From positions 33,043,545-33,107,544 of the forward strand of contig NC_069001.1 in the NCBI RefSeq assembly GCF_001194135.2: a stretch of 64,000 nt of DNA, given 5' to 3'. The notes under the pieces are model-generated. The model was given only the letters and a program-made list of their open reading frames with translations, did no database searches and was not told the origin of the DNA. This document shows, piece after piece, positions 1 to 40,025 of this stretch. The number at the start of each line of letters is the position of its first letter. The first letter of the stretch is position 1. A program made the position numbers and the translations under genes. Source of the stretch: Octopus bimaculoides (taxonomy: Eukaryota).

Positions 1-59
1 AATGTATGTATGTGTATGTTTTCTTTCTTAATTTTGATGCATAAATATTCACAACACTG

Positions 60-6225: not shown

Positions 6226-6453
6226 GTAACTTTGTACTTGGAAATGCAAAGTCCGATGGCCTACCAGTTGTGTACTGCTCAGAAGGATTCTTTGAGATTA
6301 CTGGCTTCCGACGAAGCCAAGTAATTGGCAAGCGGTGTAGTTGCAGTTTCCTCTATGGAGCCCTTACAAAAGAGGAATCAAAGCAAAAGGTTGAAGATGC
6401 TCTTATCTATCAACAGGAAACGAAAGTCAATATCTGCCTTTATACCAAATATG
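6226..6453 (+). CDS. KCNH8: Elk exon 2: PAS domain, N-terminal part ([44 protein letters not shown]...LYTKY)
   Basis: Polypyrimidine tract then cccag acceptor, G|gtaagt donor, 228 nt, phase 1-1, clear EAG-PAS homology. Confidence 0.96.
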
Positions 6454-14900: not shown

Positions 14901-17900
14901 GCTGCCAATCGAAAGGATAATTATTTTGGATTCCGAGTGAAATCAACTTTGCAGTTTTGGTTAGAATCACTTAGTAGTTTCCTTGGAAAGCTTGATTATT
15001 ACAATCTTTTCGTTTTCCTCTCTCTAAAGCATAGTAGCTATGCTTAAAATGGTTTTTGTTGTTATCTGTTTGATCATTAAAATGCAGTTACAAATTGCTA
15101 TTCTGCTCAAATAACCTTGAGAAAAGCATGACTATAATAATCAAATTTCTAAGTAATCAGTTTTTTACATTTCAGTTATCTCAAAAGCTTGGATCAGTTT
15201 TGATCAACATTGATTGATCTGTACAAATAATTTGCTGAGAGTTTGTGATGCTAAAACATTGGTATGAATGTAATGTTGCTTTCTCTTTGTTTATTTCAAT
15301 AGCAATAGGAATTTCTTCAGCAAGTGTATGTAATGAAGCTTAATTATTCTAATGATAGAAACAGTAAAGAGAATTGCAAAAACTTACTTGAAACTATTGT
15401 TATACAGGCATACCTCACCCTACGTCATTAATTGGTTCCAGGAGACACGACTTAAGTCGAATTAACTTGTCTCTAGGCTATAGAGATGTCAATAGCAGTT
15501 TTCCTTGCTTGGTGGCTGTGGTGAAAGAGGTTGTTAAGTGGACAAGGTTGAAAGGCATGAGGACAGATACATTCCTCTTTGCTTAGAGCTCTCATTGATT
15601 TCTTCAAGTTTCACTTGAAAAGGAAATTGAGAGTGGAGAGGGAAGCGCTGTCCTCGAGTGAGTTTATTGAAAGGTGGGTGAAAGTTGCAAAAATGACAAG
15701 AGTGGATCTAAGTGTAGATCTGTGAGTTGGAGAGAAGGAATTGGAGAGGGCACTTGCCCTTGGTGTTCAGGGAAATCTTGGACAGTAGGGTTCCTCAATT
15801 TTCCCTAGAGGTCTTCCTGTATCAGGAGGTCGTTATGTCTATCATCCTCCCGCCACCTTCTTTTCTTTTTTTTTTAACCTTTGTGTGCTATGTATATATC
15901 CCTTCTTTTCTGTGTATACTTACTTTCCTTTTTTTTTTAACATTTCATTATATGTAAACCCCCACACTTTATGTCTGTCTTTGTATTGTCCACCCTCATC
16001 CTTTACCCTTGTGGCAAATAAATGAAATTATCATTATTATTATTATTATTATTATTATGGTGAGCTAGCAGAATTGTTAACACACCAGACAAACTGTTTG
16101 GTGGGATTGCATCTGTCTTTACATTCTGAGTTAAATTCTGCTGAGATCAACTTTGCTTTTCATCTGTTTGGGGTTGATAAAATAAGTACCAGTTGAGCAC
16201 TGGGGTCAATGTAATCGACTTACTCTCTATCCTAAACTTACTGGCCTTGTGCCAAAATTTGAAACCATTATAATAATAATGATAATAATAATAATGATAA
16301 TAATACTCAGTTATCATTTCAGTTACAAGAAATCCATCTCAACTGGTAAACTGACTTTAGTTTTATAAATTTACTTTTTGCAGAACACGATCCTGATATC
16401 TTATCAAGTCCAACAAATGAATCACATTTCCAAAAACGAAAACGGAGAGGAAGACAAGTACTCTTTAATCTTTCAAAACAGTTTAAGTCCAGTAGGAAAA
16501 AGATGTCCCAGTTAGACAAGGTCAGCCATCTTTATATTACTTATTGGTCCATAAGAGTGTGTTTACTAATGAGATATTAATTTTTCAGGTTTTCATTCAC
16601 TGTGAGTTGAGGGTATTATAATGCTATCTACTCACAATTTTATTATACTGACTAATCTCAGTTCCAGACATCAAATGAATGCAAATAAAAACAAAAAATG
16701 TATAAGATAACATTATTGAGTGACAATTTCCAACATGTTGAGTTTGTGGTCTTGTTTTCATTTTTATCTGAGGTAGTTACATGTTGCTGTGAGCCTCCCA
16801 TATTTCATAATATAGAGAAATACAGGCTTCATTGGACTGGCTTGTCATTGTCATGCTAGATGAAGACAAAAATGGTATTCCAGTGACTCAGTGAAACACA
16901 TCTACTTATTAGAACTTGTTTTGACATTAGTGTCAAAGCAAGAGAGATTATGAGAAATATTTAATCCATGTCTTTTAATTTTACATTTATTTCTTATTAA
17001 GACAAAAAGGAAAATGTCCTGATAAAATGGATTCTTCTATCTTTTACTTGTTTCAGTCATTAGACTGAAGGCAGTGCTCCAGCCATGCTGGAGCACTGCC
17101 TTGAACATTTTTTCAGTTGGACAAACTGACCCAGTACTTATTATGTTTTTGTAAAGCCTGGCATTTATTCTATCAGTCTCTTTTGCCAAACTGCTAAATT
17201 ATGGGGATGTAAACACAACGGCACCAGTTGTCAAGGGGTACTGGGGGACAGACACAAACACTACCCCCCCCCCCCACACAAACATACAATAGTCTTCTTT
17301 CAGTTTCTGTCTATCAAATCCATTCACAAAGCTTTGATCGGCCCGAGGCTATAGTAGAAGACACTTGCCCAAGGTGCCATGCAGTGGGACTGAACATAGA
17401 ACCATGTGGTTGGAAAGCAAACTTCTTACCACACAGTGAAGCCTGTACCTGTATATACTCACATATAAATATACCACCACCATCTTCAACAGGATTCATG
17501 CCTCAATTATAAATATCCAGAATCACAATTATCTCCCTGTAGATTTAAATTTAAATACAGGTGGATAACTTATCATTAAAATAATACATAAAACTCTTGC
17601 TTTATGCAAGAAAGTAAAATAATAAGCTTATTGTATACAGCACTCAGGTATACTACAACTCATCAAAAAGGTTTAAAAGAATAGACAGAAAACACGTATA
17701 CAAGGAAGAAATGACAGCAACGAAAGCTAGAAGTATATACACACTGGCTAGAATAAATAGACAGAAAAGTGAACATTAAAGGCGTCATAAAGAGAAACGC
17801 TTTTTAGCAAGTTTCAGTAAATAGAATTAACACATAAATCATATGTAAAGTAACATATATTTGTGTGGAATTAAATTGTTTTGGCATATTTAAGCATGTG

Positions 17901-19022: not shown

Positions 19023-22000
19023 TGAAACTCATACATGCAATTCTGAGCAGGCCTCACACTGTTATTACACTGACTGAACTCATTTCCATATATCAAATGT
19101 GTGCAGATGTATGCAAAATGAATAAGTGAATGAATAAATAAATAAAATAAAAATGCAATAAAATAAAATGAAGTAATAAAGAAAGAAAGAATAAAAGCTA
19201 TAATGCAAACGGTATTGGATATAGGTTACTCAACAGATACTTGGCATTAATTGTTAATCTCATTTCAATGAATGAATTACGAGGAAACAATGCCCCCATG
19301 ACCAATCGCCTGTAATCAAACAATGAAAAACAGAAACTATAATTGATTAATTACATCTTAATCTTTCACCAAAATACTCAAGTCCTAAAGCTGCTGTAGA
19401 AGTAGTAGTAGTGACAATATGGGTAGTAGTGATGCTATCCTGGTGGCGTTTTGGTTATGGTGCTACTAGTTGTGTTGTGGGTGTGCTCTGCATGATAGTG
19501 TTGCTGATAGTGGCTTTGGATGAGGGTAGCATTAGTGGTTGTTGTCCGTAGATTATATTTAGTAGATGTTGTAGCGATGATGTGGTGATAATTAAGTTGT
19601 GGTTATATTGTTAGAATAATGATGTAGTTGTCGCATCAAGTTCGGTTCATGCTGGAGCATTTTTAGTAGCAGAGAGACGTTGGTGGTAGTGGTGGTGAAG
19701 CAGAGGTTATACTGCTCTTAGTTGTCATGATGAAAAATAATAGGCTGAGTTTTACAACCATACAAAATGTTTTGACCTGTTTGCATAGTGTAAAGGATTG
19801 ACCGAGAAGCATTGAATGGAGCAAGAATGCTGTGTATTACTGGTATTTACTGACTCTGGAAGGATGGAACCATAATGAACATTCATAGGATTTATATAGG
19901 ACTAGCTTCCAGTTTAGCATTTTATTGTCTTGGATATCTTAATTACCTTCAACAAGTCTAACAACAAAATCTTAATAATAATAATAATAATAATAATAAT
20001 ATTCAACAAAACCTGTAACAAACGAAATAGATGTGCCTTTCAAACACAATTCCTATGGTCCTCTGATATTTTTGGCATCATGAGGATTTAAATAATAATG
20101 ATATCAACCAATTTGGTCTTAAAATTAGGTGGTGAAATGAGCAAGATATGAGAATTTAGTTTTTCTTTCAAGTATAAACAGTTAAGAAACAGTTGAGAAA
20201 TGTAAAATAAGTGATAACAGCAGCAACAGCAGTAATAAATAGTTCAACTTTAATATAGGGATCAAATAATAATATTATTGATAATTTCTGAACCAGGTTT
20301 GAATTCTTAGGCAAGCAGAGTTAAGTATCTTGCATTGAGATACAGCACAATGTCTGCAATAGAATTCAAGCTGACAAACCTAGGAACCAGGATTCCAGAA
20401 TCTTATGCATTTAACCATTATAATTTTCAACCAGGCATTGGTTGGCATAAAAACATAAGGACACTTTATAATTCTTATTATAATGATTGATTTAGAATTA
20501 AAGTGGTTGTAGTTAAAAATTATCATAATGTATCAATTCAAGAAACGCAGTGTTGTGGATCCTACCCAAAATGTTATTGGGATGATGGATGAAATTGTAA
20601 GTATAATGGTTATATTTTATACATACATGTGTGCATTTTCTATAGTGAATATAATAGTCATATTATATTGTATTCTATATATGTATATATGTTTACACCA
20701 GTGAGCACAATGCATTAGTGTGTGTGTGTGTGTGTGTGTGTGTGCAGACATAGATGTATGGTTGAGAAGTTCTTTTTCCAGCCATGTGATTTCAGGTTCA
20801 GTCCTACTGTGTGGCACTGAGCTATAGCCGCTATAGCCTCAGAACAGCCAAAGTCTTGTGGGTGATTTGATAGATGGAAACTGAAGGAGGACTGTCATAT
20901 GTATATATATATATATGCATGCATGTGTGTGTGTGTGTGTGTGTTAACATCTGCAATTGATTGTACAAAAGTGCAGTGGTTGGTATTGTCAGTTTCTCCC
21001 ATTAACAAAGTATTTTGTGCCTTTGAAGCCATGTGGAATAAGTGACCCCTTACTTGAAAAACAAATAAGGGTTAGCATCAGGTAGCGGGTGGGTTCCATA
21101 GGCATATACTCTTTTATTGTAAGGCTCATGTTGAATTATCCTGACATAGTATATGACAAGGCTGGAACTTTGAATTATAAATAAGCTACCTACACAGTAT
21201 CCTTCTACCTAGTTTTACTCACAAAGCTTAGATCAATCTGAGTTTATGGTAAAAGATACTTGCCCAAGATGCCAGTCAGTGGAACCATTCCTATGACTGC
21301 ATGATTGTGATTAGAACTTCTTAACCTTTCACTCATAACAACATTGATTTAATAATGAATTACCATGCAGTTCATTGCATGCGTATGTGTGTGTGTGTGT
21401 GTGCGCCCATGTGTGTGTGTGTGAGATCAAAGCAGCTAGAATATACATATATCCTTAAATGTCAGTGTTTGTGGTATACAATGTATAGCTAAAGTGTATA
21501 TAAGTGAAACATGCGCATGTTTGTTTGCCCTTCTGTATTTAAACATAGTTATAGATACGTATTTATGTGTGCATATCCTGTACCCATGTAATTTAACCAC
21601 TACTACCTTAAGTTTCATAAACAAAATTAGAAGCGGTTTTTGTATATATGTGCATGTGAACGTAACTTTATGAGAGCTAGTGTATTTATGTTTACATGTA
21701 TTTAAAATATGTATATACAAGTTTATGACAAGCGTATGTGTATGTAAGGAAGATTAAGTCGTTGTATTAATAGCCTTCTCTCCATTATCATCGTTGTTTT
21801 AACCTCCACTCCATATATATGCATATGTTCACTAATTGATGTAGATGTACTAATTATGGACAGGTGCTCCACTGCATGTACATATGCACACACATGCATA
21901 CAGACACACATTATAGACATACACCCACCACCACCACCACCACCACCACACACACACATAATCCTTTCTGCTATAGGCACAAGGCCTGAAATTTTGGGGA

Positions 22001-25000
22001 GGGGTAAGTCGATTACATCAACCCTAGTATTCAACTGGTACCTAATTTATCGACCCTGAAAGGATGAAAAGCAAAGTCGACCTCGGCAGAATTTGAACTC
22101 AGAACGTAGCAGCAGACGAAATATTGCTAAGACACACACACATATAATGTGTGTAATATATAACTGTGTGTGTATATGTGTGTATACACTCACATACATT
22201 TATATATGTATATATGTGTATGCATACATGTATATGAGGTACCCATTTATTCATATACATGCACGCAGTACTTCCTGCAGTATATACACAAATGGGCACC
22301 TTGTCCAACCTCCTCTAAACATTTCTTCCCACCTCACCCATAATTTCTCTCACTGCGACTACTCCACCCCTTGAAACCATCCTATTTTTCTTGCTACCTG
22401 GAACCATGTCACTTGTTAGATATTCTTCATTCATTCATTATTGTTCTCCTCACCCACATCTTACAGTGATAGTCCCACCAACCACACTGAACTACCAAAT
22501 TATCTCCCCTAATGCACTACTCCTGCCTCTTTCCCCATCAGGTGTCATGTCTCCCTTGTTCCCCTTTTGTCAACTGTATTATATTTACTGTTTCTATTTG
22601 ACACCACCCATATGTTTCTCTCTCCTAATCTTATTTACATCCCTCTATTTTTCCCAACTCACACACCATTACTCATCCATCATTCCCTACATCCACCCTT
22701 CAACCCTACCCATCTTTAACATTCTTGCTTACCTCCCAACCCCCCATCTCTTGCTCCCTCCCCATTTTTGCAATCCCCTCCTACCCACACTCCTAGTTCC
22801 TCTGTCTTAATGCACTTCTACTCATCTCATACCTTGAGGAGACACTTAGGCTTGCAGCTCCTACTGATCATTCTCTCTCTCTCTCCTAAATCTGATTAAC
22901 CATGTAGATCCTCTACTACAGAACCTTCTTGCCTCTCCCTTTATCCTGCCCTCCTTTCACACTCTTATGTCTCATCTCCTCCTATAACTCTGCATTTTTT
23001 TCCTGGTTTTGTGGTCTTGCAAGCTGCATGGTGACTTCACTATTGCTGGTGGCAAGAAAAAATGCACCCAGTACATACTGTAAAGTAGTTTGCACTAGGA
23101 AGGGTATCCAGCCGTAGAAATCATGCTAAAGCAGACAATGTAGCTGAATGTAGCCCTTGGACACCTTACTTGCTTCATTTTCGTGATTTGTTCTATGTAT
23201 TGTTGGACAGGACCTGATAGTGTATTTGTGTTTTGTTAGGGGATCATTCTGGCATAGTTTCAAAAATGCACAACTGTTGTGTCCTGGATTGTGTACTTGC
23301 CAAATAGCTGTTGTTTAATTGAAGTAAGCCTTTTGGCCACTTTTCAAATGAACAGCAAATTATTGAATGCTGATATCTTGTTTCTGCTGGATTTGAGCAA
23401 TTTCCCCACAGCTGTTTTGTTTTGTTGGAGAAAATATCACAGCTTCAGATCCCTCATTAAAATACTAGAAAACATGTTTGATGGACTGTATTTACTTACA
23501 GAATTCAGCATTAATAAGTTCATTGAATACATCAGTTAGGTGCGAGCAGTAGGGATCTATTTATCTATTGTCAATTACATGCTGTACAAACAAGGCTCAA
23601 AAGTCTTCATCCTTTGGTACTCTTCTGTAAAAGGGCTAGCTGTCTTTATTTGTTTGATGTTTCTTTGGCAAATGATCTTGGAAACCATTTCATGCATTTG
23701 TTGTATTCCATGCAAGGTGAATTCCTGTTGTGAGAATTGAGTACCAAAGGGTCTATTATTTTCATTATTGGCAATTCAGAACTCCAAGATAGATTCAGGT
23801 TCCAGTGTTTGCTCAAAATTTCTGATGTATTTGTTCTTTGCATGGGCTATCACATACACACACTCACAAGCACATACACACACATTTGATCTTTCATTTG
23901 CCAGTTATTTTTGTCCTCCACCAGCTCAGTTATTAATAAAAAATATCTTATTTTAGATAATTCCAAAATTCATGAGGAATTTAGTGCACAGAAAGTTTGC
24001 ATCAGGAATCTGTCACCAGTCCTCTTTTATCTATTAGAATGCTTGAAAATATAACACAAGATTTCAAAACCATTTGTTTTGGAGAGGGTTTTCCATATAG
24101 ATAACTTTGTCTGTTGAAGTGTTGCAGCAGTCGTTCTTAAGCTGCCATCTTAATTTAGTCTAAAATTGGAAAGACCAAAGTGCTAATTACTAAGAGGAGG
24201 TGCAAAATCTTAGTTAAATCTGTGAAAAAGCCCTGGTTGATATGAAGAATGGAAGTTAGTATTGAGCAGAAAATTTGCTATGACAGTATTTCTTCTTCAG
24301 CAACTCAGTGCTGAATCTGTTTGAGATGGAATGAAAAATAGGTCAGTTTCAAAACACTGATGCCCAGATCAGAAAAGCAAAGTTTGAAGGGAATAGTTAT
24401 CAATTCCTTTGATTTCTAATTAGAAGCAAATAGGTAATAACACTTACTGACCAAGGAACAAAAATAGTTACACAGTGTTATTGATACTTATGTTATTTTA
24501 TTGACTCCAGATATAAAAAGTAGGTGGGGTTTGAGCACAGAATGTAAAGAGACATGACTAAAGATGCAAGTCAGTAATTATTTCCACCACACCACAACTG
24601 TTTTTAGTAACAACAAAAGTAATTATTCAGTGAATGTTGATGAACTGACATTTTCCATTGATTTATTATTTGGTTTGTCTGCTCTCTCTGCGTTTCTCTT
24701 GCTAATCCAGCCAGTCATTTGCCTCGACTTTATATTTTACTTTTTCCTCCTTCTGAGTACATAATCTCTACCTGATAATGCTAGACACCTTCCTTCTTTC
24801 TTCTCCTCTTTCTCTTTCCACATGTACACACATACTTTCACATCTACACATGCACTCTGTCTGTCTGTCTCACAACTTTTTAGTTTATACTCTCATCTTT
24901 TTCTCTGTTGCTGCTATTATCTCTCTCTCTCTTTCTCTCTCTCTCTCTTTTCACTCCTGTTCTCTTTCATTTCCTTCCTATTTAATCACCCATCTTTCCT

Positions 25001-25134: not shown

Positions 25135-25200
<66 letters not shown>

Positions 25201-25845
25201 GTAACATTTGTTTTCTATGCTGGTGGCATGGGTTGAATGGTTTGACATTGTGGCAAGACAAAAGGCTGTACAGAGCTTCCATGTCAAAAGCTGGGTCAAC
25301 AGATCCACTTGTTCAAAATTACCAACAATAGCTGATCATTTGCACTATAATTCCGTCACTTGACATACTCCTAGAGATACCAGATTCACTAATAAAACCA
25401 CACACCTGGCTATAAGTGATTCAGTTGTTTTATGTTCCCAGCAGTAACAAATTCATCAGCACCATATAACCATCAATGGCAAATATCACTCACATCACTC
25501 CGAACGGTAACAAATTCACATATACCGCATTTCTACACCAAATTCACCTGCCCTATACTCCTGACAATAATAGATCACTTGTACCACACACACACATCAT
25601 TTGTACCTCATCTCTGACAATAATAGATGTTAATCCTCACTAGGCCTTTCATGAAGTTTAGCCAGGTTTTCATATTCCCACCAGAATATAGGGCAAACAT
25701 TGTAAATGAGATACATCTATCATCTCAATCACTTGGCATGAAACTAATGGTAGCTTTGTTAACCCACAAATAAAGAATATTCATCCACCAATGTGGTTTT
25801 GAGCACTCATTCTCACTGTCCAATATTAGTGTGTATATGTGTGCA

Positions 25846-25884
<39 letters not shown>

Positions 25885-28800
25885 GACCTCCCCTTGCAAA
25901 TACTAATCGGACACAGACTATGTGTTGTTAGCCAGCTGGAGGAGATATCTTCCGGGGACTATAAACAACAGTAGCGTTGTCCTGTGTAGGAAGCCACACT
26001 TACTTGGCAAATATTTGTTATGATTCCGTACCGCTACTGTTTATATCTCACTCAGAGATGGGATGATGATGTCTGTTTGCATACAAATCTAAGGAAATGG
26101 ATAAAGTGTACTGGATTGAGAAGGTTAAGAATTTGGAGGGAGAGGATGGGGAGGTAAAGAATCAGGTGTCAGGGTGTATTTAAGAGTTTTAGCGGTGGAT
26201 GGAATTGGTAGTATATGATCTTGAACAAATGAGTGGTATGAAAATAATAATATACGTACATAGACACACAAACATAGATATATATACTTATCTGTGTGTG
26301 TGTGTGGAGAGAGAGAGAGAGAGAGAGAGAGAAAGAAAGAGAAAGAGTGAGAGCTGTAAACATATAGCTATGTTTGTATGTGTATGTACATATGTGTTTG
26401 TATGTGTATGTACATATGTGTGTGTATATACATGTGTGTGTGTGTGTATATTATACTTACATACACATATGTATAAGTATATACATATGTGTGCATGTCT
26501 TATCATTATTATTATTATTATTTAGTGCAAAGCACCTTGGCACCATTCATATGTTCAAGGCCATATGCTAGCAATTCCATTTACTGCTAAAACTCTTAAC
26601 CACACCCTGACACCTGGTTCATTTCTTCCTCTTCCCCAAATTTTTGGTAGACCAAGATGCTGGTCATACCCTGGGATTGAACCAAAACTACATTACTTGC
26701 AAAGTAAACTTCTTAACCACACAGCCTGGCTTGCACTTACAATATTTGATGATGTGTAGAAATCTTGAGACATAATGTGTATTTGGGAATATGCATATAC
26801 ATATCAGTGTGCATATAGAAATGTTTTGATTCTCTCAGGATATAAATGCACATGTTAGTGTGTGTGACCTTAATTCTGTGGAGAAAAACAAGCAAATCTT
26901 TTCCTTTATTATTAGCCAAAACTGTGCATTGGAGGGATAAACATTACAAATAAATTAGAAGTGACAAATTAAGAGGAATGATAAACACTTCTTAAACCCC
27001 CAAATCATTATAAACTTGGAAGAATTCATCTATTGATTTTGGCAAGCTTTCATGTACCTGATTAAAAGAAACAACAAAATAAAGCATAAAAAAACTACCT
27101 GTAATTTCTGAGATTTAGTACTAAGGTAGCCAGTGGTGTCCATTTGTAGACACTACCTAGCGCTCTCTTCAGAATCATGCAGTGCAGTCAGGAGAAACAT
27201 AGCTATATGCGTATCACTGGTGAACAAAATGTCCAGTCAGAAGCAGAAACTAAATTTGATGTTATCTCTGAGTTAGACAGTAATGAAGATGCTGATCTTG
27301 TCAGGAGGAAATTAGTGGAAGTGAGTTGTATCATGTTCATTAATTTGTTTGTGTGATATATTTTTTGATGATTACTTAATTCATGTATTGTTTGTTATTT
27401 TTTGTTCATATCACTGACAACTTTGTATCTTCCTTTGAGGTTAATCTCACTTAAAAAAAATGTCAGTGTCCTTGTGGGGTAGAATGTGTCTTCTAAATTT
27501 TACTTACAAAGCTTTAGTTAATCCATAGTTATGGTAGAAGCACTTGCCCAAGGTACCATGCAATGAGATCAGCCCCAAAATTTAACAGTTGCAAATGATA
27601 ATTATTAAAGATATAGATATTTCCATCACTTGTTAAGGTTATCTCTACAAATTTTTGGAGAAATTATGGCCAGCACTGATTTTGTTGCGATGTTTCATAT
27701 CTGAGACACCTAATGTAAACAAAAATGAGATTGACGATGAAAACTGGATAATGGGCATAGAACGTAGTATTCTTTTCTACTCTAGGCACAAAGCCCAACA
27801 TTATTGGGGAGGGAGCCAGTCGATTAGATCGATCCCAGTATGCTGCTAGTACTTTGAGGGAGGGAGGGAACTAGTCAATTGCATCGACTCCAGTGTTTCA
27901 CTGGTACTTAATTTATCAACCCCGAAAGGATGAAAGGCAAAGCTGACCTTGGTGGAATTTGAACTCAGAATGTAAAGGCAGACGAAATACTGCTAAGCAT
28001 TTCGCCCGGTGTGCTAATGTTTCGGCCAGCTTGCCGTCTTCATAGAACACAGTATTGACTTAGAAATAAAAACGTTTAATAGACTTTGTAAGTATATTAT
28101 GGTTGCATAATGAAACAAGGTGTCCCTATGAGTAATTAAGATGTCTCCATGCATAATATCTTCAGCAAAAATATATCTCAACTCTACCAATTCTTTCTTA
28201 ATGTCATGGAGCAATTTATCTCTCATTATGACAAATAAAAATATTTGAATTTTTATCCTTCTGCCTCATGATTTTCAGTATCTTCCCACTACACCACATT
28301 GTAGTGTTTCCTCAAATTGGAAGTTTTCAAAAAGTTTATCATTTTGTTCCCCATATTAGCTGACTGACCTATCATTATTTTATTCTAGTCTCTACCAAAG
28401 TGGTTCTCAAAACTTCTGTCTTTTTTACTCCATGGCACACTTTAGAGCAAGTAAAAAGATATTTTGGCACATTTTGTAGGTAAAGAAAAAAAATGTGTTA
28501 GAAAAAAAGGTATTATATATTATAGCTTTCAAATATAATTTCGACTAGACAAAATGATTAAATACTTTCTTTAGTCAATAAAGAAAGCATAATTATCAAG
28601 ACTTTATATTTAGAGTTTCAGTTTGTATTTTTTTCATTTTTAAGATGTAATTTTATTACTTTCATGATGCGTCTAGCCACATCTTATGGCATCCCAGTGC
28701 ATCCTCTGGGACCTGCTGTTCTACAAGAATAAGTGAGAAAAGAAAATATGATTAATTTATTTTCTGTGGTTGGGGGTAGACAATGAGATCATCATTTAAC

Positions 28801-31800
28801 ATTTGCTTTCCATACTGGCATGGGTTAGACGGTTTGACTGAAGCTGGTAAGCCAAAGAGCTGTATCAGGTTCCAGTCTGATTTGGCACGATTTCTACAGC
28901 TGGACGCCTTTCCTAACATCAATCACTCCAAGAGTGTAATGGGTACTTTTTATGTGCTACTGGCATGAAGTTGTGATATCTACATTAAAGAAGAATATTC
29001 TTCTAGGGAAGAAAGTCTAGTTCACTAATTGAAAGACAAATATTCAAGTAGTTTAGTTTATAAAAATGTAATCTATTCACTTCAAGCACATTACTTCTTG
29101 AACTAAGACTGTAATTAATTCTTTGTTACTTATTCAAATAATTCATACAACAAATACAACAGATGAGATATTCATTGGCTTGAAGTGCTGAGTTTTAATT
29201 CTTTCTGATGAAAGTTACTGAGATAAATCTTCCAGGGTACCCAGGAATGATTAAATGTTTATATCTGATGGAATAACAAATCTTATTAACTGGTACTTAT
29301 TTTATTAGCTCTGAAAGGATGAAAAGCAAAGTTGACATTGATGGAATTTGAACTCAGAACATAAGGATAGACAGAATGCCACTAAGCAATTTTCCCTGCA
29401 TGCTAACATCTCTGCCAGCTCACCACCAGGAAACTGTAAAATATTAAAAACTAACGATTGATGAAAAATACTCGGATACCATTTACATGAAAAAAAACAA
29501 ACAATAGTTACACTTGTGTTGGCCATTAAGCAAGTATTTTCTTATCAATCGCATACTTATTTCTAATTAGCTTCTTCATGCTAATTGTATTAAATATGTT
29601 AACCTTACTTAGTTATTGAAACATATTAGGATTAATTTAAACCAAATGATAAAAGTCTGATAAATCAACAGAGTGGCTTACTGTTTGATTTAACTGACTT
29701 ACATGTATGTTAAGTATTGGCAGAATCAGTAATATGCCCTTTACTTATCAATTTTGGTGCTCTGACTAATCTAACATGTGAGAAAGAGAGTGAGAGAGAG
29801 CGAAAGGGGGTGGCAGAGAGAGAGAGAGAGAGAGAGAAAATGACGGGTATAATCTCTTGGCTGGATTATTTATTACTTAATGTAATAATTTCAATATTCG
29901 TTTGGATGAGTACGTACAAATTTGTGAGTGTATGTATATATTTGTATATGTGCGTGCATGTGTGTATGTATGTAAAGATATATAAATGCATATATAGGCT
30001 TATGTATACATATGTGTATATATGTATGTATGCATGTGTATGTATGTATGTATGTATATGTAGTGTTTGTGTTTGTGTGTGTGCAGATGCATTTTCTTTT
30101 TCCTGCTGGCTCTCTCTCTCTCTTTCTCTCTCTTACACACACACACATACATGAGTGTGTATGTGCGTCCCCATGCATTCATGTTTGCATGTGTATGAAA
30201 ATGTATGTGTGTGTGTGTGTGTGTGTGTGAGATCTTCATTTGGTAGATAAAAGGTTTGTTACAAAAAGATGATAAAGAGATTATGTGCATGTACACACAC
30301 ACACACACACACAAATACATACATTATAATCTATTAATTAATTCATATTCCACTACACAATATTTTTGGATAATTTAATATGCTCGTTTAAGATATATCC
30401 TTTTAATAAACATAACAGTTTTAGCCTTTCTCCATGAGAGAATTAATTAATTAATTAATCCTGTTTACTAAATCAAACCAACCAGTTAAGCTGAGTCCCA
30501 GGTTGTATACACTAGAAATAGCTATGTAAGCTAGAAATCTTTCCATGGTTGAGAGATGGGTAGTCTTTGTTTGATGAATGGCTAAGAAAACTAGAAACTA
30601 GGCAGAAAAATCTCACTTTTTCTGTTCATGGAGAGAATAGAAATACGTACTTGTTCACAGCGGTGCTAAAATCTAATGTTCATTATTTCAAATTATAATC
30701 TCTATACAGTTTCTTCTGTATAATATGTGTCTATACACACATTTAAAATTTACAACCAACAGTTTTTCTGGATATACATTTTTCCTGAAAAAAAGAAACA
30801 GACATGGATTGCATTCTTTCTTTTCCCAGTTTTTTATGGGAAATGGTTGAAGATTACAATTATATTGTAAGTTTATATTATTATTACAATATGTTCCATT
30901 GGTGTAGACTTTGGTTTGTTGTATCTTGTGTTGTTTTTGTGTTTGATCTGATGTGTAGAGTATGCACAATGCAAGTTATTATTATGGTATGTTGGACGTT
31001 AGTTTCATATATGTTGTAGGCTTGGTGTTTAGTGTTTTAATGTTGGGCAAGGTGTGTCTAGAGTATGTTGTTTGGGTTGTGAACACGATCAATGTTTTCC
31101 TTGGTGATGACAGTTGCAGGATGTCCAGACCTTGGGTGATCTTCAACACTCTACCTTTCCCTCCTAAATTCAGCTACCCACTTTTGCACTGATGACCAAG
31201 CTACAGCATCATTCCCTAATGTAGCAACCATATCAGCATGAATGTTCTTGGATGTTAAACCCTTTTTATGTAGGTATTTGATAACATGACGGTGTTAAAT
31301 TTTGTCCATTTTCAAGATAAGTTGCTATTAGTTGTTTTTGAAGTCTTCTCTGAACAGTCAGATGTCAGTTTACCTGGAAAGAAACAATGCAGTTATTAAT
31401 AAGAAGGGTTGAAATTAATGTATGCGAGATTTCACAGGTATAGCGTCACTCCTTCATAGTCGGCCCACTAGTGAAGCTAGAAGGGGGGCAGAGGGGGAAG
31501 TCCACCCCATATAGCACTTTTATGGGTGTGCCACCACTTTTGGGTATGCTGTAGGCAATATGTATTTTTTGTAAGGGCCTGGAGCCTGCAAAATGAAGGG
31601 CTGCTCCACATGGCACACATTCTAGCTACGCCAGTGAGTCAGCCTATGAACTTTTCAGCCCATCCTCATAGAGTACACTTTCTGATAATCCTAATATTTA
31701 ATAAATGCCATAATCACATTACTTTTTAATCAAATCGTAATTAACAAAAGCTAATTATTATTAATTGTACTAAATCAGTACTTTTAACTAAATTCATAAT

Positions 31801-33274: not shown

Positions 33275-34208
33275 CAAGACACTTTGTCTTACATGATCTT
33301 GCATTTTCTAACTGTTGGGAATAGATGTCAAAAGCCTATAATAAAGTGATCTTCCATCCAAGAGGAAATATTTGTTTTTCATCAACAGAAACCAAAACAG
33401 AATTCTGATGCAATGAAGTTTTGATGTTCAAGAAAGAATTAACTTGTTTCAAGCTTGAATTTACATGAAACTGAATTATTTTTTTCTCATTATGAATGAA
33501 AATATTTATAATTTCCAGCAAATTTGAAAATGTCTAAATACTTTCACATTTTTTCTTTATTTGAAATCTTTTTGTTAACATTTAAGATATTTTAATATAT
33601 GCATTACCTCAACCAAGTTGTTTCATGTTTTCTCATCTTAGCTGCAAGAGGCTGTATCTGGTCAACAGACTGTGCCAGAGTACAAAGTGGAAGTCCAAAA
33701 GAAAGGCAAAGGAATAATTCTTCATTATGGCTTTGTGAAAGTCCTCTGGGATTGGTTAATTATGCTATGTACCTTTTACATTGCTATTATGGTACCTTTC
33801 AATGCTGCATTTATTGTCGGAGAATTTGTCAGGACCACAATTTATGCTGATGTTGCAGTGGAGATCATTTTTGGAATTGGTAAGTAAATATGCATACTGA
33901 AGAAAAACAAAATTATATAACATAGTATTGATTCAAAATGAAATCCTGTGTCACTCTCATTCCTTGTCAGCAGTAAACATGAGCTTATATCATTGGGGCA
34001 AGGAAAATCTGTTTAACCCTATCACCTGAGCCTTGGATACATTTGGTGGTGTATGAATACAGGTTGTTGTGAGTCATTTGGGCCAGTCTTAGAATCACTG
34101 AATAAGGTCATGGGTACTGCCATTCCACTTCTCAGTAATTTACTTAAAAAAACCCACTCTAATTGGATGATGAAATTTCACTTATATGTGCTAAATATTA
34201 CATGTATT

Positions 34209-34541: not shown

Positions 34542-37500
34542 CTTAATATGACTAGTGGACACGTGAATTGTCCATAAGCATTTGATCAACTACTTTAGGA
34601 ATCTGATCCAATCTTTTTGGTATATTTCAAGCAGAGATGATACAATTTACCATATTGGATTGTTAAATATTAAAAACACCCACTTCATGTTTTCTCAGTT
34701 TTTCTGTTTTTCTCCCACTCAGTCTTCTACTCCTTTGTCTTCTCTCACTCTCCCTCAATATTCCATCATGCTGAGTGTTGTCTTTCACTTTCACTTCTCC
34801 TTTCATTTCTTTCAGATATCATTTTGAATTTCCGAACAACGTATGTCAGTAATACTGGTCAAGTGATTTATGATGGAAAACTTATTGCTTTGAACTACAT
34901 AAAACAATGGTTTCTCATGGATCTTCTGGCTGCTATTCCTTTTGATTTACTTTATGCTTTTCAAGTAGAAACGGTGAGCGATATTCTATCATATATCAGA
35001 AGTGTTTGCGTGAGGGTGGAAGAAGTTTCTCTTGCTCATATGTATTTTGAATGTGTGTGTGTGTGTGTGTGGAGGGGGTGAGGTATTTGCCCCTAGAACA
35101 CTGAAATTTTGCATAAAGATACATGTTATCAAGTAGTAGGTCATAAACTACTTGTCTTTTTCTGATACTTTCCATGAACCTAAACCAAGGCCAAGTAATG
35201 CTGTTAGTGGTTCTGCTTTGAAGTTAACTTATAGGGACTTTGGCAAATGACAACAAATTGAAGTAAATTCAAATTATTTATTCAAGGTTTGATTGGTTTG
35301 ACAGATGATGTGGAACTGCAGGCATTCTTCAGCCGCACCAACAATGAGGGGCAGACATACTGACAATTACTACAGAACGGAGGTCTTTTCTTACTAAAAG
35401 CCAAATGCCTTGAAAGAAATTTGTATATTACACTGACTTGTTGTCTAACAATACCTCAACTTTCTATATAGGGCAAAGAAATCTGAATGCAAAAGGGTTA
35501 ATTTTAACTTGTATTCTCCAGGTTGGTTGAATGGATAGTGAGATATATTATTAAACTTTGTGAAATAAACCAACAAAAACTGAAATTTTTGATTGCTTTT
35601 GCCAGGGTACTCTTATTCCATTGCTGAAGGTTGCCAGATTACTGAGATTAATACGGTTGTTCCAGAAAATGGACCGTTACTCACAATATGGAAGTGTTGT
35701 GATAATCCTGTTGCTGTCCATGTTTACTTTAACAGCTCACTGGTTAGCTTGCGTTTGGTACAGCATAGGGAAATTTGAACTACAGAAACATCCAACAAGC
35801 TGGAGGATAGGTAAGTACTAATGGAATTACATTTGGTGGAATTCTGCTTTAAGCTCCCCATATAACCACTCATAACCTTTTCACTTTTTGGAATTTTCAG
35901 ATAATCTTTGTGAATTTGTGTTCTACACATACGAATCCATATGGTTATGCAAAAACCAAAGACAAAAATTTTTTGTGTGATTTAAGGGCTATTTAGCTGT
36001 TATTTTTAGCACCACTCACAACCACCTGATATGCTCCTTGTTAGTTTGTCACTCCAATACATTGATGTATTTCAATATCTTTCTACCCATAAACACATTT
36101 AATGGTCTATTACTGGGATTTAAGCAAAATATTCAGATCTTCTGTATTTAAAAAAAAACTGTTGATTTAAAAAAAAGAATTTGGAAAAATTATAAAACAA
36201 AAAAATTTTTTTTTAATTCGANNNNNNNNNNNNNNNNNNNNNNNNNNNNNNNNNNNNNNNNNNNNNNNNNNNNNNNNNNNNNNNNNNNNNNNNNNNNNNN
36301 NNNNNNNNNNNNNNNNNNNNNNNNNNNNNNNNNNNNNNNNNNNNNNNNNNNNNNNNNNNNNNNNNNNNNNNNNNNNCAAACAAAGTTTTTTTTTTTTTTT
36401 AGAAGCGCTGAGATGTATTGTAAGATACAGAAATAAATATATTTCTCAAACGCGTGATAATGCTATAAATAGCGTGATCAGGATAAATTACCCATATAAT
36501 GCAGAAAAATACGTTACTGGCCAGCCCTGATCATGCTATTTATAGCATTATCACGCGTTTGAGAAATAGATTTATTTCTGTATCTTATATATATTACTGT
36601 TTTTAGACCTAAGTTTTTGCTGGTGTTTAATTTGAATTTCTCTGTTCTCTAGGCTGGCTGAATGAATTGGCGGATACATTAAACAGACCTATTATGAATC
36701 GCACACATTTACCTGATATGTGGAGTTGTTACTTAACAGCTCTCTATTTCACTTGTAGTAGTTTAACTACAGTAGGCTTTGGTAATGTATCAGCCAATAC
36801 AAATGCTGAGAAGATCTTCTCTGTTTGTGCAATGCTCATTGGTGGTAGGTATCAGTTTTCTTTAATTTTGTATTTAATAATCCTCTTTCTTTTTATTTGT
36901 TTATATAAATTTTTGTATACTTGTATAAGAATTTGGAAGCATAGTTAGTGTCAATCTATCAGCAGAAAAAAAACTTCATGATTTATATCTTATCTTTCTT
37001 GCTGTGCGGTATTTTTTGGCCAAAATATTTAAATGTTACTGATTCAATTTCCCTTGCTGTAAAATAAGCACCATAGGAAACCAGTTAATCATTCATGCCA
37101 TTGAGGGGAACTCTGAGTGGTTGCCTTGCCTGCTAGAAATAGAAATTACTTTTCAAAACACACCCTGCTATCTTAAGTAAGAAAGGGCATGTTAGATAAA
37201 GTAGTCCTACCTGCTCCTAAAAGATAGGATGGTCATAGTTGGAATGTCTTTTGATCTGAGCTAAATAACAACAGCAACAACTACTAATCATTGTAAGCAG
37301 CAGAATGCAGCATGTAATTAAGTTTATGTAAGCATGTAATTAGTAGATACACTAGTGAGGATAATTAATGATAGTATAGATAGCTGCATTTTGAGAGGGT
37401 ATCTAGTTAATTATTAATGGATATGTACTGTTTACTTAGCGTGTACGTATATGAGATCATTGTATGTATATGATCAGCGTGTATGTATATGAGGTAATTT

Positions 37501-37769
37501 TATGCTGCAGTGAAAGTTCCATTCTAAATGTTTTGTTTCCTTTGCAGCAATGATGTATGCTTTGGTGTTTGGTAATGTGACTGCTATTGTGCAGAGAGCT
37601 TATGCGAGAAGAGCTACATTTCACATGAAAACTAACGACTTAAAGGAATTCTATCACACTTACAATATTCCGAAACCTTTGAAGCATCGAATCCAAGACT
37701 ATTTTCAGAGTATGTGGACAATGAATAATGGAATCAATCTAAATGAGGTAAAAGAAAAAAAGAAGTTTT

Positions 37770-37803
<34 letters not shown>

Positions 37804-38600
37804 ACAGTTAATGTCCATGTTCCCTGCTGGCATGGGTTGGATGATTTGACAGGATTCAATGAGTGCAACGACTGCATCATTCTCCAGTGTCTGCTTTGGC
37901 ATAGTTTCTATGGTGGCTGCCCTTCCTAATGCCAAACACTTTACAGCATGGAGTGGGTGCCACATGCATTATTCAAGTCACCATACAGCCCACAGGACTA
38001 CAAACCCTGGTGGAGTTGGGGGTTCAGCTTCATGCTAGGGGAGGAGGTGATAAATTATGAGAATGTGGGGAGGTTGGAGCAGATCCTTGTAGAGGACCTG
38101 CATGGCTACTCACATCTAGAAGAGAGAAAAGAGAAAATGGTTGGTAGGAGCTGCAAAGTTTTAGAGAATGATGATAAGGTGCCCCGGGAGGCCTGCAACA
38201 CAGAAATTGAACAAAAGTGGGTGAATGGATGGTTTGCAAAATTGTATGGGAAGGAAATAGATGGGATGGTAGACTACAAAAATGGATAAGGTTGAAGGGT
38301 GGATGAACAATAGTGAACCATGAATTGGAGAAGATTGAATCATAAGACTAAAATTATAAATCTTATCCCTTGATCTATTTTACTTTCCATAATCAAGTCT
38401 ATAAGTAATTTATATCTCTACATAGGTGCAGGTATAGGTGTGTGGTAAGAATCTTGCTTCCCAAGCACATGGTTCTGTGTTCAGTCCCATTGCATGGCAC
38501 CTTGGGCAAGTGTCTTCTACTATAGCCTCAGGCAAACCAAATCCTTGTGAGTGGATTTGGTAGATGGAAACTGAAAGAAGCCCGTCATATGTATATGTGC

Positions 38601-38642
<42 letters not shown>

Positions 38643-40025
38643 TCACCACTGCTTGACGACTGGTGTTAGTGTGTTTATGTCCTCTTAACTTAGCGGTTTG
38701 GCAAAAGAGATCGATACGTAAGTACCAGACTTTAAAAAAAGGNNNNNNNNNNNNNNNNNNNNNNNNNNNNNNNNNNNNNNNNNNNNNNNNNNNNNNNNNN
38801 NNNNNNNNNNNNNNNNNNNNNNNNNNNNNNNNNNNNNNNNNNNNNNNNNNNNNNNNNNNNNNNNNNNNNNNNNNNNNNNNNNNNNNNNNNNNNNNNNNNN
38901 NNNNNNNNNNNNNNNNNNNNNNNNNNNNNNNNNNNNNNNNNNNNNNNNNNNNNNNNNNNNNNNNNNNNNNNNNNNNNNNNNNNNNNNNNNNNNNNNNNNN
39001 NNNNNNNNNNNNNNNNNNNNNNNNNNNNNNNNNNNNNNNNNNNNNNNNNNNNNNNNNNNNNNNNNNNNNNNNNNNNNNNNNNNNNNNNNNNNNNNNNNNN
39101 NNNNNNNNNNNNNNNNNNNNNNNNNNNNNNNNNNNNNNNNNNNNNNNNNNNNNNNNNNNNNNNNNNNNNNNNNNNNNNNNNNNNNNNNNNNNNNNNNNNN
39201 NNNNNNNNNNNNNNNNNNNNNNNNNNNNNNNNNNNNNNNNNNNNNNNNNNNNNNNNNNNNNNNNNNNNNNNNNNNNNNNNNNNNNNNNNNNNNNNNNNNN
39301 NNNNNNNNNNNNNNNNNNNNNNNNNNNNNNNNNNNNNNNNNNNNNNNNNNNNNNNNNNNNNNNNNNNNNNNNNNNNNNNNNNNNNNNNNNNNNNNNNNNN
39401 NNNNNNNNNNNNNNNNNNNNNNNNNNNNNNNNNNNNNNNNNNNNNNNNNNNNNNNNNNNNNNNNNNNNNNNNNNNNNNNNNNNNNNNNNNNNNNNNNNNN
39501 NNNNNNNNNNNNNNNNNNNNNNNNNNNNNNNNNNNNNNNNNNNATATATATGTATATATTTATATATATATATCTGTCCAAAATACACAGTAGGAATACA
39601 GGGAGAGGAGAGAAAGTAATAATTGAGTGAAGGAGAAGTAGTGAGAGTAATAGCCATGACTGAGAGGGAGTGAGAGAAAGTAATAATAATGATAGAGAGA
39701 GAGGAAGTGGCAAAGAGAGCATTGTGTATCTTCTATTATAATAATCTACTATAATAATACTCCAGTGAATTTCTCTGTCATAACATATGAATGAGAAGGG
39801 AAGGGGTGATCTACCAATGGAAGTGGGATGGTGAAGAGTTAACGGTGAAATAAATATCAAACAGTGCTTCAACTCTGTGTAAGTATATGTGTGTGCATGT
39901 AAAAGGGAGGACTGTGAATGTGTGTGTATGTTTGTGTAGAATATATGCTTGAGTGAATGTATATGTGTTTGTGGATGTTTATTTAGAAAGATACATAGAA
40001 AATAGAATCTCTCTCTCTCTCTCTC

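What the first reader, a model, noticed from the sequence alone, without database searches (positions are those of the whole stretch)
27147..27326. Hidden alternative first exon predicting a PAS-less, hERG1b-like Elk isoform
Seen: in the middle of the 17,121-bp intron 4 there is an ATG (A at -3, in-frame stop 30 nt upstream), 48 open codons of plausible composition ending [11 protein letters not shown], and a consensus GTGAGT donor in phase 0. It joins exon 5 in frame ([15 protein letters not shown]) and would give an 893-aa channel with no PAS domain. It is below the ORF-track cutoff and has no repeat similarity. Known: vertebrate ERG1b uses an internal promoter and a unique 36-aa exon ending RVRRAVRISSLVAQE, spliced to the homologous VLSLGADVLPEYK exon, and heteromers with the PAS-bearing form have altered deactivation. 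I know of no such isoform described for an invertebrate Elk. Inference: convergent or ancient use of the same junction to tune gating. Alternative: the AG at 27181-27182 makes it a 138-nt in-frame cassette. The AG at 27171-27172 would fit an upstream non-coding exon.
Basis: partly seen in the sequence, partly recalled or inferred. Interest (0 to 1): 0.85.

Follow-up and report, generated by a model that had tools for sequence, protein, structure and literature searches.

The report
Candidate PAS-less Elk channel first exon
A 144-base open reading frame with a start codon and a strong splice donor lies in a large intron of an Elk-type potassium channel gene. It looks more like a real exon than anything else unannotated in the window and sits in a block conserved in a sister species, but no transcript shows it is used, so a channel form lacking the PAS gating domain remains a plausible, unproven prediction.

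Summary

The bare pattern (ATG, open frame, donor) occurs at chance level; the antisense strand of the same intron has a 42-codon equivalent. Two other results are not chance-like:
- **Exon-likeness:** its codon-usage score beats all 148 sense intronic ORFs of at least 48 codons. Its combined donor and coding score (16.5 bits) is the best of 34 decoys on both strands; the next best is 12.0.
- **Conservation:** I found the orthologous locus in three Logan contigs of a sister species. The segment forms the 3' end of a roughly 500-bp block that is 93.7% identical, against 85% in the flanks (p = 3e-6). The block ends about 20 nt past a fully conserved donor.

Against a constrained coding exon:
- The ORF is no better conserved than the non-coding part of the block.
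- The synonymous/non-synonymous split is not significant.
- Two of the three sister contigs carry a 2-bp insertion that puts ATG1 out of frame. Only the 38 codons from ATG2 (27207) are open everywhere.

No transcript evidence could be reached. I put about 0.4 on a real alternative 5' coding exon. The in-frame cassette reading is disfavoured.

The parts
16384..16520 (+). Exon 4 of the Elk gene (PAS-to-S1 linker, ..KKMSQLDK). Ends in phase 0, donor gtcagc.
   Evidence: open frame across exons 2-11.
26850..27172 (+). Conserved non-coding stretch upstream of the ORF, 93.5% identical to the sister species. It contains an 88-nt identical run (26910-26998). It is a putative proximal promoter and 5'UTR if the exon is a first exon; that role is inferred.
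   Evidence: No Rfam match, no hairpin and no stable fold.
27009..27014 (+). TATAAA, conserved, 163 nt upstream of ATG1. It is a possible TATA box, but this hexamer is common in AT-rich DNA (about 1 per kb).
   Evidence: sequence reading. Function is inferred only.
27147..27149 (+). In-frame stop (TAG; TAA in the sister species) that closes the frame 30 nt upstream of ATG1.
27155..27172 (+). Pyrimidine-rich tract followed by AG (CTACCTAGCGCTCTCTTCAG). This is a good, conserved candidate acceptor 5 nt before ATG1. If exon 4 spliced here, the frame would hit TAG at 27200.
27177..27320 (+). Candidate coding segment of 48 codons from ATG1. Codon score is 0.25 bits/codon and coding log-odds 12.0 bits.
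   Evidence: Orthologous ORFs are P0004, P0007 and P0008.
27207..27209 (+). Second in-frame ATG (M11), with weak context (T at -3). It starts the only frame that is open to the donor in all four sequences (38 codons).
27321..27345 (+). GTGAGT donor (27321-27326) plus downstream intron. Identity is unbroken from 27291 to about 27341 (a 50-nt run). A 31-bp indel follows and conservation collapses.
   Evidence: Donor score is 4.5 bits, against -0.4 to 6.6 for the gene's ten real donors.
33642..33879 (+). Exon 5 ([15 protein letters not shown].. to S1). Acceptor is in phase 0 and is the splice partner of the candidate donor.
   Evidence: A distant Elk orthologue has the same intron position and phase.

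Best explanation
The segment 27177-27320 is most likely a real, rarely or tissue-specifically used alternative 5' coding exon of this Elk (Kv12-type) channel gene. Transcription would start inside intron 4, either in the conserved 26850-27170 stretch or further upstream with splicing into the AG at 27172. Translation would start at ATG1 (27177), or at ATG2 (27207) where ATG1 is out of frame. The GTGAGT donor would join exon 5 in phase 0. The product keeps the whole S1-S6 core, C-linker and CNBHD but replaces the PAS/eag domain and linker with 38-48 acidic, probably disordered residues.

By analogy with ERG1b, such subunits alone or mixed with full-length ones would lose the eag-domain/CNBHD contact. 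That contact slows deactivation and underlies open-state stabilisation in Elk channels, so the current would shut off faster.

**Shown:** the sequence anatomy, the exon-like statistics, and conservation of the block, donor and ATGs in one sister species.
**Inferred:** transcription, splicing, translation and every functional consequence.
For: - **Codon usage.** The score is 0.25 bits/codon. This is above all ten leave-one-out real exons and all 148 sense intronic ORFs of at least 48 codons, and above all but 1 of 153 antisense ones.
- **Frame specificity.** The other two frames score about -0.03. Stop-free shuffles reach the observed score in 2-10% of cases. Codon-position composition (G1 0.38, A2 0.46, T3 0.38) matches the real exons.
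- **Combined score.** Donor plus coding score is 16.5 bits, first of 34 ATG-ORF-donor decoys on both strands of 47.5 kb; the next scores are 12.0 and 10.8. No other unannotated sense segment exceeds 10 bits of coding score.
- **Composition shift at the donor.** T content jumps from 0.26 to 0.46-0.49 exactly at the donor.
- **Conserved block.** The sister-species contigs L001-L003 show block 26850-27345 at 93.7% identity versus 85% in the flanks, Fisher p = 3e-6. The ORF alone versus the flanks gives p = 0.01. A 50-nt identical run spans the donor. ATG1, ATG2, the upstream stop and the candidate acceptor are all retained.
- **Position in the gene.** The junction position and phase are conserved in a distant Elk orthologue and align with the hERG 1a/1b divergence region.
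- **No other identity found.** The segment shows no repeat, protein-family or RNA-family identity.
Against: - **No transcript evidence.** No protein or ORF in the searched collections contains the 48 aa joined to exon 5. These collections hold almost no cephalopod transcripts, so this is weak evidence.
- **Conservation is not exon-specific.** The ORF (93.1%) is no better conserved than the 320 nt upstream of it (93.5%; p = 0.84).
- **No codon pattern.** Of 10 substitutions against L002, 4 (5 if the doubly changed CAG/CGC codon is counted along its substitution path) are synonymous. Permutation gives p = 0.31 for at least 4 and 0.11 for at least 5. Keeping the frame open is expected by chance in 73% of permutations.
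- **ATG1 is out of frame in two contigs.** Two of the three sister-species contigs carry a 2-bp insertion between ATG1 and ATG2. ATG1 then opens a 33-codon dead-end frame overlapping ATG2.
- **Variants are protein-altering.** Every variant among the three contigs lies inside the ORF and changes the protein (Q5H, frameshift, R12H, N36S).
- **No distant counterpart.** Nothing comparable lies in the orthologous intron of a distant Elk gene.
- **General caveat.** Ab initio first-exon predictions have a high false-positive rate.
Confidence: 0.4

Rival explanations
1. It is a chance open frame. The ATG, 48 codons and donor are an accident in a purine-rich, T-poor patch of intron. That patch is either neutral or part of a conserved non-coding regulatory element (an intronic enhancer or silencer of the Elk gene). 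Nothing is spliced or translated from it.
For: - The bare pattern occurs at chance level: a 42-codon equivalent lies on the antisense strand of the same intron and a 49-codon one in another phase.
- The most conserved part of the block (26850-27050, 94-98%) is upstream of the ORF and non-coding.
- The ORF is not better conserved than that part, and the substitutions are not codon-patterned.
- A frameshifting indel and only protein-altering variants are present in the sister species.
- There is no homologue beyond the sister species.
Against: - The frame-specific codon score is the highest of about 300 intronic ORFs.
- The combined score is 4.5 bits above the best of 33 decoys.
- The conserved block ends about 20 nt past a perfect, fully conserved donor, and base composition switches there.
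- An enhancer has no reason to show these features together.
Confidence: 0.37
2. It is a real internal exon, 27173-27320 (148 nt), using the AG at 27172 and the GTGAGT donor, but it is non-coding in effect. Included between exons 4 and 5, it shifts the frame and brings in TAG at 27200, making it a 'poison' exon that lowers channel output through nonsense-mediated decay. Alternatively it is an exon of a non-coding transcript.
For: - A good pyrimidine tract and AG at 27155-27172 are conserved, and slightly improved, in the sister species.
- The donor is strong and conserved, and the exon is purine-rich and enhancer-like in composition.
- The stop after 9 codons in the exon-4 frame is confirmed and retained in all haplotypes.
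- This reading tolerates the 2-bp indel and the protein-altering variants.
- Conservation extends into both flanks, as is typical of regulated alternative exons.
Against: - It gives no reason for the ATG with A at -3, the 48 open codons, the phase-0 match to exon 5, or the frame-specific codon bias. Together these would be a coincidence of a few percent.
- There is no transcript evidence for this reading either.
Confidence: 0.17
3. It is an in-frame 138-nt cassette (27183-27320) using the AG at 27181-82, which would insert 46 residues into the PAS-to-S1 linker of the full-length channel.
For: The frame is open and in phase with exons 4 and 5 in the window sequence and in L002. The linker is a variable region in KCNH channels; this last point is from general knowledge.
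Against: - The AG at 27171-72, with the better pyrimidine tract, lies 10 nt upstream and would normally be chosen first.
- Further AGs follow at 27186-87 and 27190-91.
- The cassette becomes 140 nt, and so frameshifting, in 2 of 3 sister-species contigs.
Confidence: 0.03

Closest known systems
ERG1b (KCNH2 alternate transcript; London et al. 1997 and Lees-Miller et al. 1997, as reviewed in PMC9113952 and PMC7515569)
   Same: - It has a start site in the intron that precedes the exon encoding the end of the N-linker (..PEYK..) and S1.
- One short isoform-specific coding exon replaces all PAS/eag-encoding exons.
- The product keeps the full channel core and CNBHD.
- The octopus junction aligns within a few residues of the hERG 1a/1b divergence point.
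   Different: - It belongs to a different subfamily (Elk/Kv12, not Erg/Kv11) and a different phylum.
- There is no sequence similarity between the two specific N-termini.
- ERG1b is proven by cDNA, protein and physiology; here nothing is shown beyond genomic sequence.
- The octopus start codon is not stably in frame in the sister species.
ERG1c / KCNH2-3.1 and the eag-domain-less Erg genes of cnidarians and some bilaterians (Martinson et al. 2014, cited in bioRxiv 10.1101/2025.09.21.677649)
   Same: These are KCNH channels that work without a complete eag domain, obtained by an internal start site or by gene-level loss. They show that PAS-less KCNH subunits are viable and recur in evolution.
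   Different: All of them are Erg-subfamily cases. The review text states that all KCNH channels except ERG1b have a PAS domain. No Elk case was found in the papers searched.
Intronic pseudo-exons and poison exons of ion-channel genes
   Same: A splice-competent acceptor and donor pair about 150 nt apart lies deep in a large intron, with flanking conservation and a premature stop in the main frame.
   Different: Pseudo-exons do not normally carry a start codon, a long frame matching the next exon's phase, and a frame-specific codon bias.

Membership tests
KCNH channel gene, Elk (Kv12) subfamily (the host gene) | N-terminal PAS/eag domain closest to Elk PAS domains | tested here: met
   the fly ELK PAS structure 4hp4 scores 119.8 bits over 102 aa. 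The hERG PAS scores 76.7 bits over 109 aa.
KCNH channel gene, Elk (Kv12) subfamily (the host gene) | Six-TM core with a GFG selectivity filter, a C-linker and a CNBHD closest to Elk | tested here: met
   TVGFGNV is present. The full core aligns to hERG and EAG structures (E about 1e-150 to 1e-160). For the CNBHD, zebrafish ELK 3ukn scores 236 bits and mosquito ERG 4l11 scores 168 bits.
KCNH channel gene, Elk (Kv12) subfamily (the host gene) | Groups with Elk rather than Erg or Eag in a phylogeny | not tested
   No tree was built and no full-length Kv12 structure or sequence set was at hand. The intrinsic-ligand motif reads FNL as in hERG; I recall that vertebrate ELK and EAG have YNL there, which I did not check with a tool. 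Assignment therefore rests on the two domain comparisons only.
ERG1b-type alternate transcript (PAS-less KCNH isoform from an internal promoter) | A single isoform-specific exon with its own ATG, closed upstream, spliced in frame to the first shared exon | tested here: met
   ATG at 27177, stop at 27147, phase-0 GTGAGT donor, phase-0 acceptor at 33642. This is shown at sequence level only.
ERG1b-type alternate transcript (PAS-less KCNH isoform from an internal promoter) | Transcription start site inside the intron | not testable with these tools
   No CAGE, RACE or RNA-seq data were reachable. The only hints are a conserved upstream stretch and a TATAAA at 27009.
ERG1b-type alternate transcript (PAS-less KCNH isoform from an internal promoter) | Spliced transcript containing the specific exon joined to the shared exon | tested here: inconclusive
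   Searches found no such product. The collections also lack the ordinary exons of this gene from any cephalopod, so absence says little.
ERG1b-type alternate transcript (PAS-less KCNH isoform from an internal promoter) | Reading frame and donor kept under purifying selection in related species | tested here: inconclusive
   The donor is 100% conserved and the frame from ATG2 is open in 4 of 4 sequences. ATG1 is out of frame in 2 of 3 sister contigs. The synonymous excess is not significant (p = 0.31 for at least 4 synonymous, 0.11 for at least 5). Only one, closely related, species was available.
ERG1b-type alternate transcript (PAS-less KCNH isoform from an internal promoter) | Co-assembly with the long form and faster deactivation | not testable with these tools
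   This needs heterologous expression and electrophysiology.
Poison (NMD-inducing) cassette exon | Functional acceptor and donor, and a premature stop when included in the main transcript | tested here: inconclusive
   The sequence requirements are met: acceptor-like tract ending at 27172, GTGAGT donor, TAG at 27200. Inclusion cannot be tested.

The most novel reading that the evidence does not exclude
A lophotrochozoan Elk (Kv12) gene makes a PAS-less subunit from an internal promoter in the same intron that vertebrate KCNH2 uses for ERG1b. This would mean recurrent, or very old, use of this junction to tune KCNH deactivation. In addition, the sister species carries a natural 2-bp indel that moves the start from ATG1 to a weak ATG2 behind an out-of-frame upstream ATG, acting as a built-in dosage variant of the short form.
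Probability: 0.35. Interest if true: 0.55.

Novelty: new member of a known kind. Interest (0 to 1): 0.4.

Why it matters
Reviews state that ERG1b is the only KCNH form without a PAS domain (PMC7515569). Loss of the eag domain is otherwise known only for some Erg genes (bioRxiv 10.1101/2025.09.21.677649).

Elk channels set subthreshold excitability, and their slow closing and open-state stabilisation depend on the eag-domain/CNBHD contact. A PAS-less Elk subunit in a cephalopod nervous system would show that mixing long and short subunits to adjust deactivation is not special to vertebrate ERG1. It would also give a simple comparative system for testing what the eag domain does in Kv12 channels.

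If the exon is not real, the finding still marks a conserved intronic block of about 500 bp that probably regulates the gene.

Tried and rejected
- **Repeat or transposon origin: rejected.** The segment has no copy elsewhere in the window. The nearest repeat is a SINE-like fragment at 27530-27568. The 48 aa has no protein relatives except the sister-species ORF among 1.84 billion representatives. The two other hits are repeat-rich (P0005) or unrelated (P0006) long proteins.
- **Structured RNA or miRNA in the conserved block: rejected.** There is no Rfam hit at gathering score, and only a chance-level snoRNA match (E = 0.91). There are no hairpin arms, and the fold z-score is +1.6.
- **Antisense gene: no support.** Nothing in the ORF list suggests one.
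- **Duplicate of the exon 3/4 linker: taken as chance.** The match is 8/23 identities, E = 0.017 for one comparison, and it spans an exon junction.
- **Exact look-ups of the window's own 59-aa and 49-aa ORFs:** not on record.
- **Search with the 48 aa joined to exon 5:** only exon-5 ORFs of distant animals came back.
- **Search with the sister ORF:** only its own cluster came back.
- **Search with the 277-aa last-exon ORF, meant to calibrate real-exon divergence and learn the library type of the runs:** no hit.
- **Metagenome scans for the conserved 27-mer and for the peptide:** nothing found.
- **Papers:** none mention SRR11869385 or related runs, so the species and library type of L001-L003 stay unknown.
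- **Distant Elk orthologue L004:** intron position and phase are conserved, but there is no similar peptide, and the only ATG-ORF-donor candidate there is a tandem repeat.
- **Exon 1 and the exons between 41541 and 57499:** I could not place them.
Full report
**1. The observation.**
Reading the window confirms every sequence statement:
- ATG at 27177, in the context agaATCatgC.
- An in-frame TAG at 27147.
- 48 codons giving [48 protein letters not shown].
- GTGAGT at 27321-27326.

Exon 4 ends at 16520 and exon 5 begins at 33642, both in phase 0. The join reads ..RRKLVE|[15 protein letters not shown].. and the intron is 17,121 bp. The AGs at 27171-72 and 27181-82 exist. I did not verify the 893-aa total, because the exons between 41541 and 57499 are unresolved. 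I did not find the PAS-cap first exon in the window, so the exon numbering is taken on trust.

**2. The host gene.**
Probing with KCNH sequences and then fixing splice sites gave an open frame over ten exons: 6226-6453, 8078-8203, 16384-16520, 33642-33879, 34816-34973, 35606-35810, 36653-36844, 37548-37747, 40358-40607 and 41308-41540. The last coding exon starts at 57500.

Against solved structures, the core aligns with hERG and EAG1 at E of about 1e-150 to 1e-160. The two cytoplasmic domains choose Elk:
- PAS: fly ELK 4hp4 at 119.8 bits, against hERG at 76.7 bits.
- CNBHD: zebrafish ELK 3ukn at 236 bits, against mosquito ERG 4l11 at 168 bits.

'Elk-type' is therefore supported, although no tree was built. 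In the hERG alignment the first residue of octopus exon 5 pairs with hERG residue 374. This is just upstream of ..LPEYK, in the region where ERG1a and ERG1b diverge.

**3. Is it more than chance?**
The pattern alone is not. In intron 4 the sense strand has one ATG-to-GTRAGT phase-0 frame of at least 40 codons (this one). The antisense strand has one of 42 codons, and a 49-codon frame exists in another phase.

The content of the frame is unusual.
- I built a codon log-odds model from the gene's own exons against its introns. The candidate scores 0.25 bits/codon.
- Real exons left out in turn score -0.27 to 0.16. The 148 sense intronic ORFs of at least 48 codons average -0.16 (sd 0.13) and none reaches the candidate. 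One of 153 antisense ORFs does.
- The signal is frame-specific. The other two frames score about -0.03, and stop-free shuffles of the same bases reach the score in 2-10% of trials, depending on the training set. Codon-position composition (G1 0.38, A2 0.46, T3 0.38) follows the real exons.
- T content rises from 0.26 to 0.46-0.49 exactly at the donor.
- I ranked all ATG-ORF-donor candidates of at least 30 codons by donor score plus coding score. The donor weights were generic values recalled from the literature and used only for ranking. The candidate scores 16.5 bits. The best of 33 others on both strands and in all phases of 47.5 kb scores 12.0.
- No other unannotated sense segment exceeds 10 bits of coding score.

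My rough estimate is that a neutral intron of this size gives such a candidate in the right phase about 1% of the time.

**4. A related species.**
An exhaustive HMMER search of 1.84 billion representatives with the 48 aa found one true relative, P0004 (E = 5.9e-10). Its cluster has three members, from Logan assemblies of SRR11869385, SRR11869390 and SRR11869391.

All three ORFs run on into ..VSCIMFI.., which is the intron. The contigs are therefore unspliced. The contigs L001-L003 (1.1-1.25 kb) are 99.6-99.9% identical to each other and 86-89% identical to window 26554-27791. They represent one sister species. I could not learn which species, or what kind of library.

**5. What the comparison shows.**
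*(a) A conserved block.* Positions 26850-27345 are 93.7% identical, against 85.1% and 84.9% in the left and right flanks (Fisher p = 3e-6). The ORF alone against the flanks gives p = 0.01. The flanks include old SINE-like copies, and the small non-repeat parts of the flanks are about as divergent.

*(b) A sharp 3' edge.* A 50-nt identical run (27291-27341) spans the donor. It is followed by 31-bp and 55-bp indels.

*(c) Key signals retained.* ATG1, ATG2, the upstream stop (TAA instead of TAG) and the pyrimidine tract with AG at 27172 are all kept.

*(d) No exon-specific conservation.* The ORF (93.1%) is no better conserved than the 320 nt before it (93.5%, p = 0.84). The best-conserved part is 26910-26998, which is non-coding in every model.

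*(e) No significant codon pattern.* Of the 10 substitutions between the window and the intact haplotype L002, 4 are synonymous when each is scored singly, or 5 if the doubly changed CAG/CGC codon is counted along its substitution path. Placing the same mutation types at random gives at least 4 synonymous in 31% of trials and at least 5 in 11%. No new stop appears in 73% of trials. The pattern leans towards coding (dN/dS about 0.3-0.4 by hand) but is not significant.

*(f) A frameshift in two contigs.* L001 and L003 carry a 2-bp insertion after 27202, in a short TA run between ATG1 and ATG2, plus two linked substitutions. ATG1 then reads 33 codons to a stop before the donor. Only the 38 codons from ATG2 remain joined to the donor. 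ATG2 has a weak context and would sit behind an out-of-frame upstream ATG.

*(g) Variants cluster in the ORF.* All variants among the three contigs lie inside the 144-nt ORF and all change the protein. None lies in about 1,100 nt of flank.

Points (a) to (c) favour a functional, splice-related element. Points (d) to (g) argue against strong protein-level constraint, at least on the first ten codons.

**6. Other comparisons.**
The exon-5 half of my first query found three single-exon ORFs from distant animals. One lies on a 293-kb ENA contig (L004) that carries a compact Elk orthologue. It has the same phase-0 intron immediately before 'L..MPEYKV'.

Its orthologous intron of about 7.2 kb holds no relative of the 48 aa. 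The only ATG-ORF-donor candidate there is a tandem repeat. The intron position is therefore old, but there is no sign that an alternative coding exon in it is old.

Searches for spliced products, for the ordinary last exon of any cephalopod, and for the conserved 27-mer or the peptide in metagenome contigs found nothing. The collections at hand hold almost no cephalopod transcripts, so the lack of junction evidence carries little weight.

**7. Alternatives examined.**
- **Repeat or known protein:** none.
- **RNA family, hairpin or stable fold in the block:** none.
- **In-frame 138-nt cassette:** it would use the AG at 27182, 10 nt downstream of a better acceptor, and it becomes 140 nt in two of three sister contigs. 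It is unlikely.
- **Internal exon 27173-27320:** spliced after exon 4, it stops at TAG 27200. A poison-exon reading fits the conserved splice signals and tolerates the indel. It leaves the ATG, the long frame, the phase match and the codon bias as coincidence.

**8. Mechanism and comparison with known systems.**
In KCNH2 a start site in intron 5 gives a single 1b-specific exon. This exon replaces exons 1-5 and removes the PAS domain. 1a and 1b subunits co-assemble (PMC9113952).

Reviews state that all KCNH channels except ERG1b have a PAS domain (PMC7515569). They also state that eag-domain loss is known for some cnidarian and bilaterian Erg genes (bioRxiv 10.1101/2025.09.21.677649). The same preprint notes that open-state stabilisation of Elk channels depends on eag-domain/CNBHD interaction.

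If the octopus exon is used, the product would be an Elk subunit without that interaction. It would be expected to close faster and to dilute the effect in heteromers. That is how I think it works if real. Every step after the sequence anatomy is inference. It is not a demonstrated member of the ERG1b class, because transcription, splicing and co-assembly were not testable, and conservation of the frame was inconclusive.

**9. Verdict.**

I assign these probabilities:
- about 0.4 to a real alternative 5' coding exon;
- about 0.37 to a chance frame, in neutral or regulatory DNA;
- about 0.17 to a non-coding or poison exon;
- about 0.03 to the cassette.

The first decisive check is simple and outside my tools: look at existing gene models and splice-junction tracks for this locus.

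Noticed in passing
window 26910-26998 (within 26850-27172): An 88-nt run is identical between the window and the sister species, where neutral divergence is about 15%. It lies just upstream of a conserved TATAAA (27009-27014). It is non-coding, with no RNA family match and no stable fold. It could be a promoter or an enhancer element.
   Followed up: partly
L001-L003 versus each other, window-equivalent 27191-27283: All differences among three contigs of the sister species fall inside the 144-nt ORF and none in about 1,100 nt of flank. They are position 27191, a 2-bp TA-run insertion after 27202 together with 27203, position 27211, and position 27283. All are protein-altering. This could be a mutational hotspot, relaxed constraint or something else.
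   Followed up: partly
window 5271-5454, 6819-7036, 17200-17560, 20755-20902, 21219-21285, 27530-27568, 38439-38626, 41904-42129: A dispersed SINE-like repeat family (about 190-240 bp, 70-88% identical copies, both orientations) is scattered through the introns of the gene. One fragment lies 200 bp downstream of the candidate exon.
   Followed up: partly
window 2593-2716, 13866-14025, 16063-16220, 22007-22131, 27800-28100, 29286-29420, 43891-44033: A second dispersed repeat family (about 125-175 bp aligned, 69-82% identity). The copy starting near 27800 coincides with the right end of the sister-species contigs.
   Followed up: no
L004 16654-17439 and 18584-19462: In the distant Elk orthologue, the start of the exon encoding S6/C-linker (..[18 protein letters not shown]) appears three times in tandem. 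The start of the CNBHD exon (..GKGDLFG..) appears at least six times. These could be mutually exclusive alternative exons or a tandem duplication of exon starts.
   Followed up: no
L004 about 2730 and about 9990; window 16520 and 33642: The phase-0 intron just before the 'L..(M/V)PEYKV' exon is at the same position in two distantly related Elk genes. It aligns with the ERG1a/1b divergence region of hERG.
   Followed up: partly
window 1-6225: The exon encoding the PAS-cap (MP..QNTFLD..) could not be found upstream of exon 6226-6453. The 5' end of the gene probably lies outside the window.
   Followed up: partly
window 36222-36376, 38743-39543, 55687-56030, 58288-58884: Four assembly gaps (runs of N) lie inside introns and just after the stop codon of the last exon. 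Exons hidden in them cannot be excluded.
   Followed up: no
window 27204-27269 versus exon 3/4 linker (8156-8203 + 16384-16405): There is weak similarity between the candidate peptide ([22 protein letters not shown]) and the linker after the PAS domain ([23 protein letters not shown]): 8/23 identities, E = 0.017 for a single comparison. The match spans an exon junction and is probably compositional chance.
   Followed up: yes
window 25135-25200: A perfect (CAT)22 microsatellite lies in intron 4. Long TG/TA-rich microsatellites at 25829-26451 mark the left end of the sister-species contigs.
   Followed up: no
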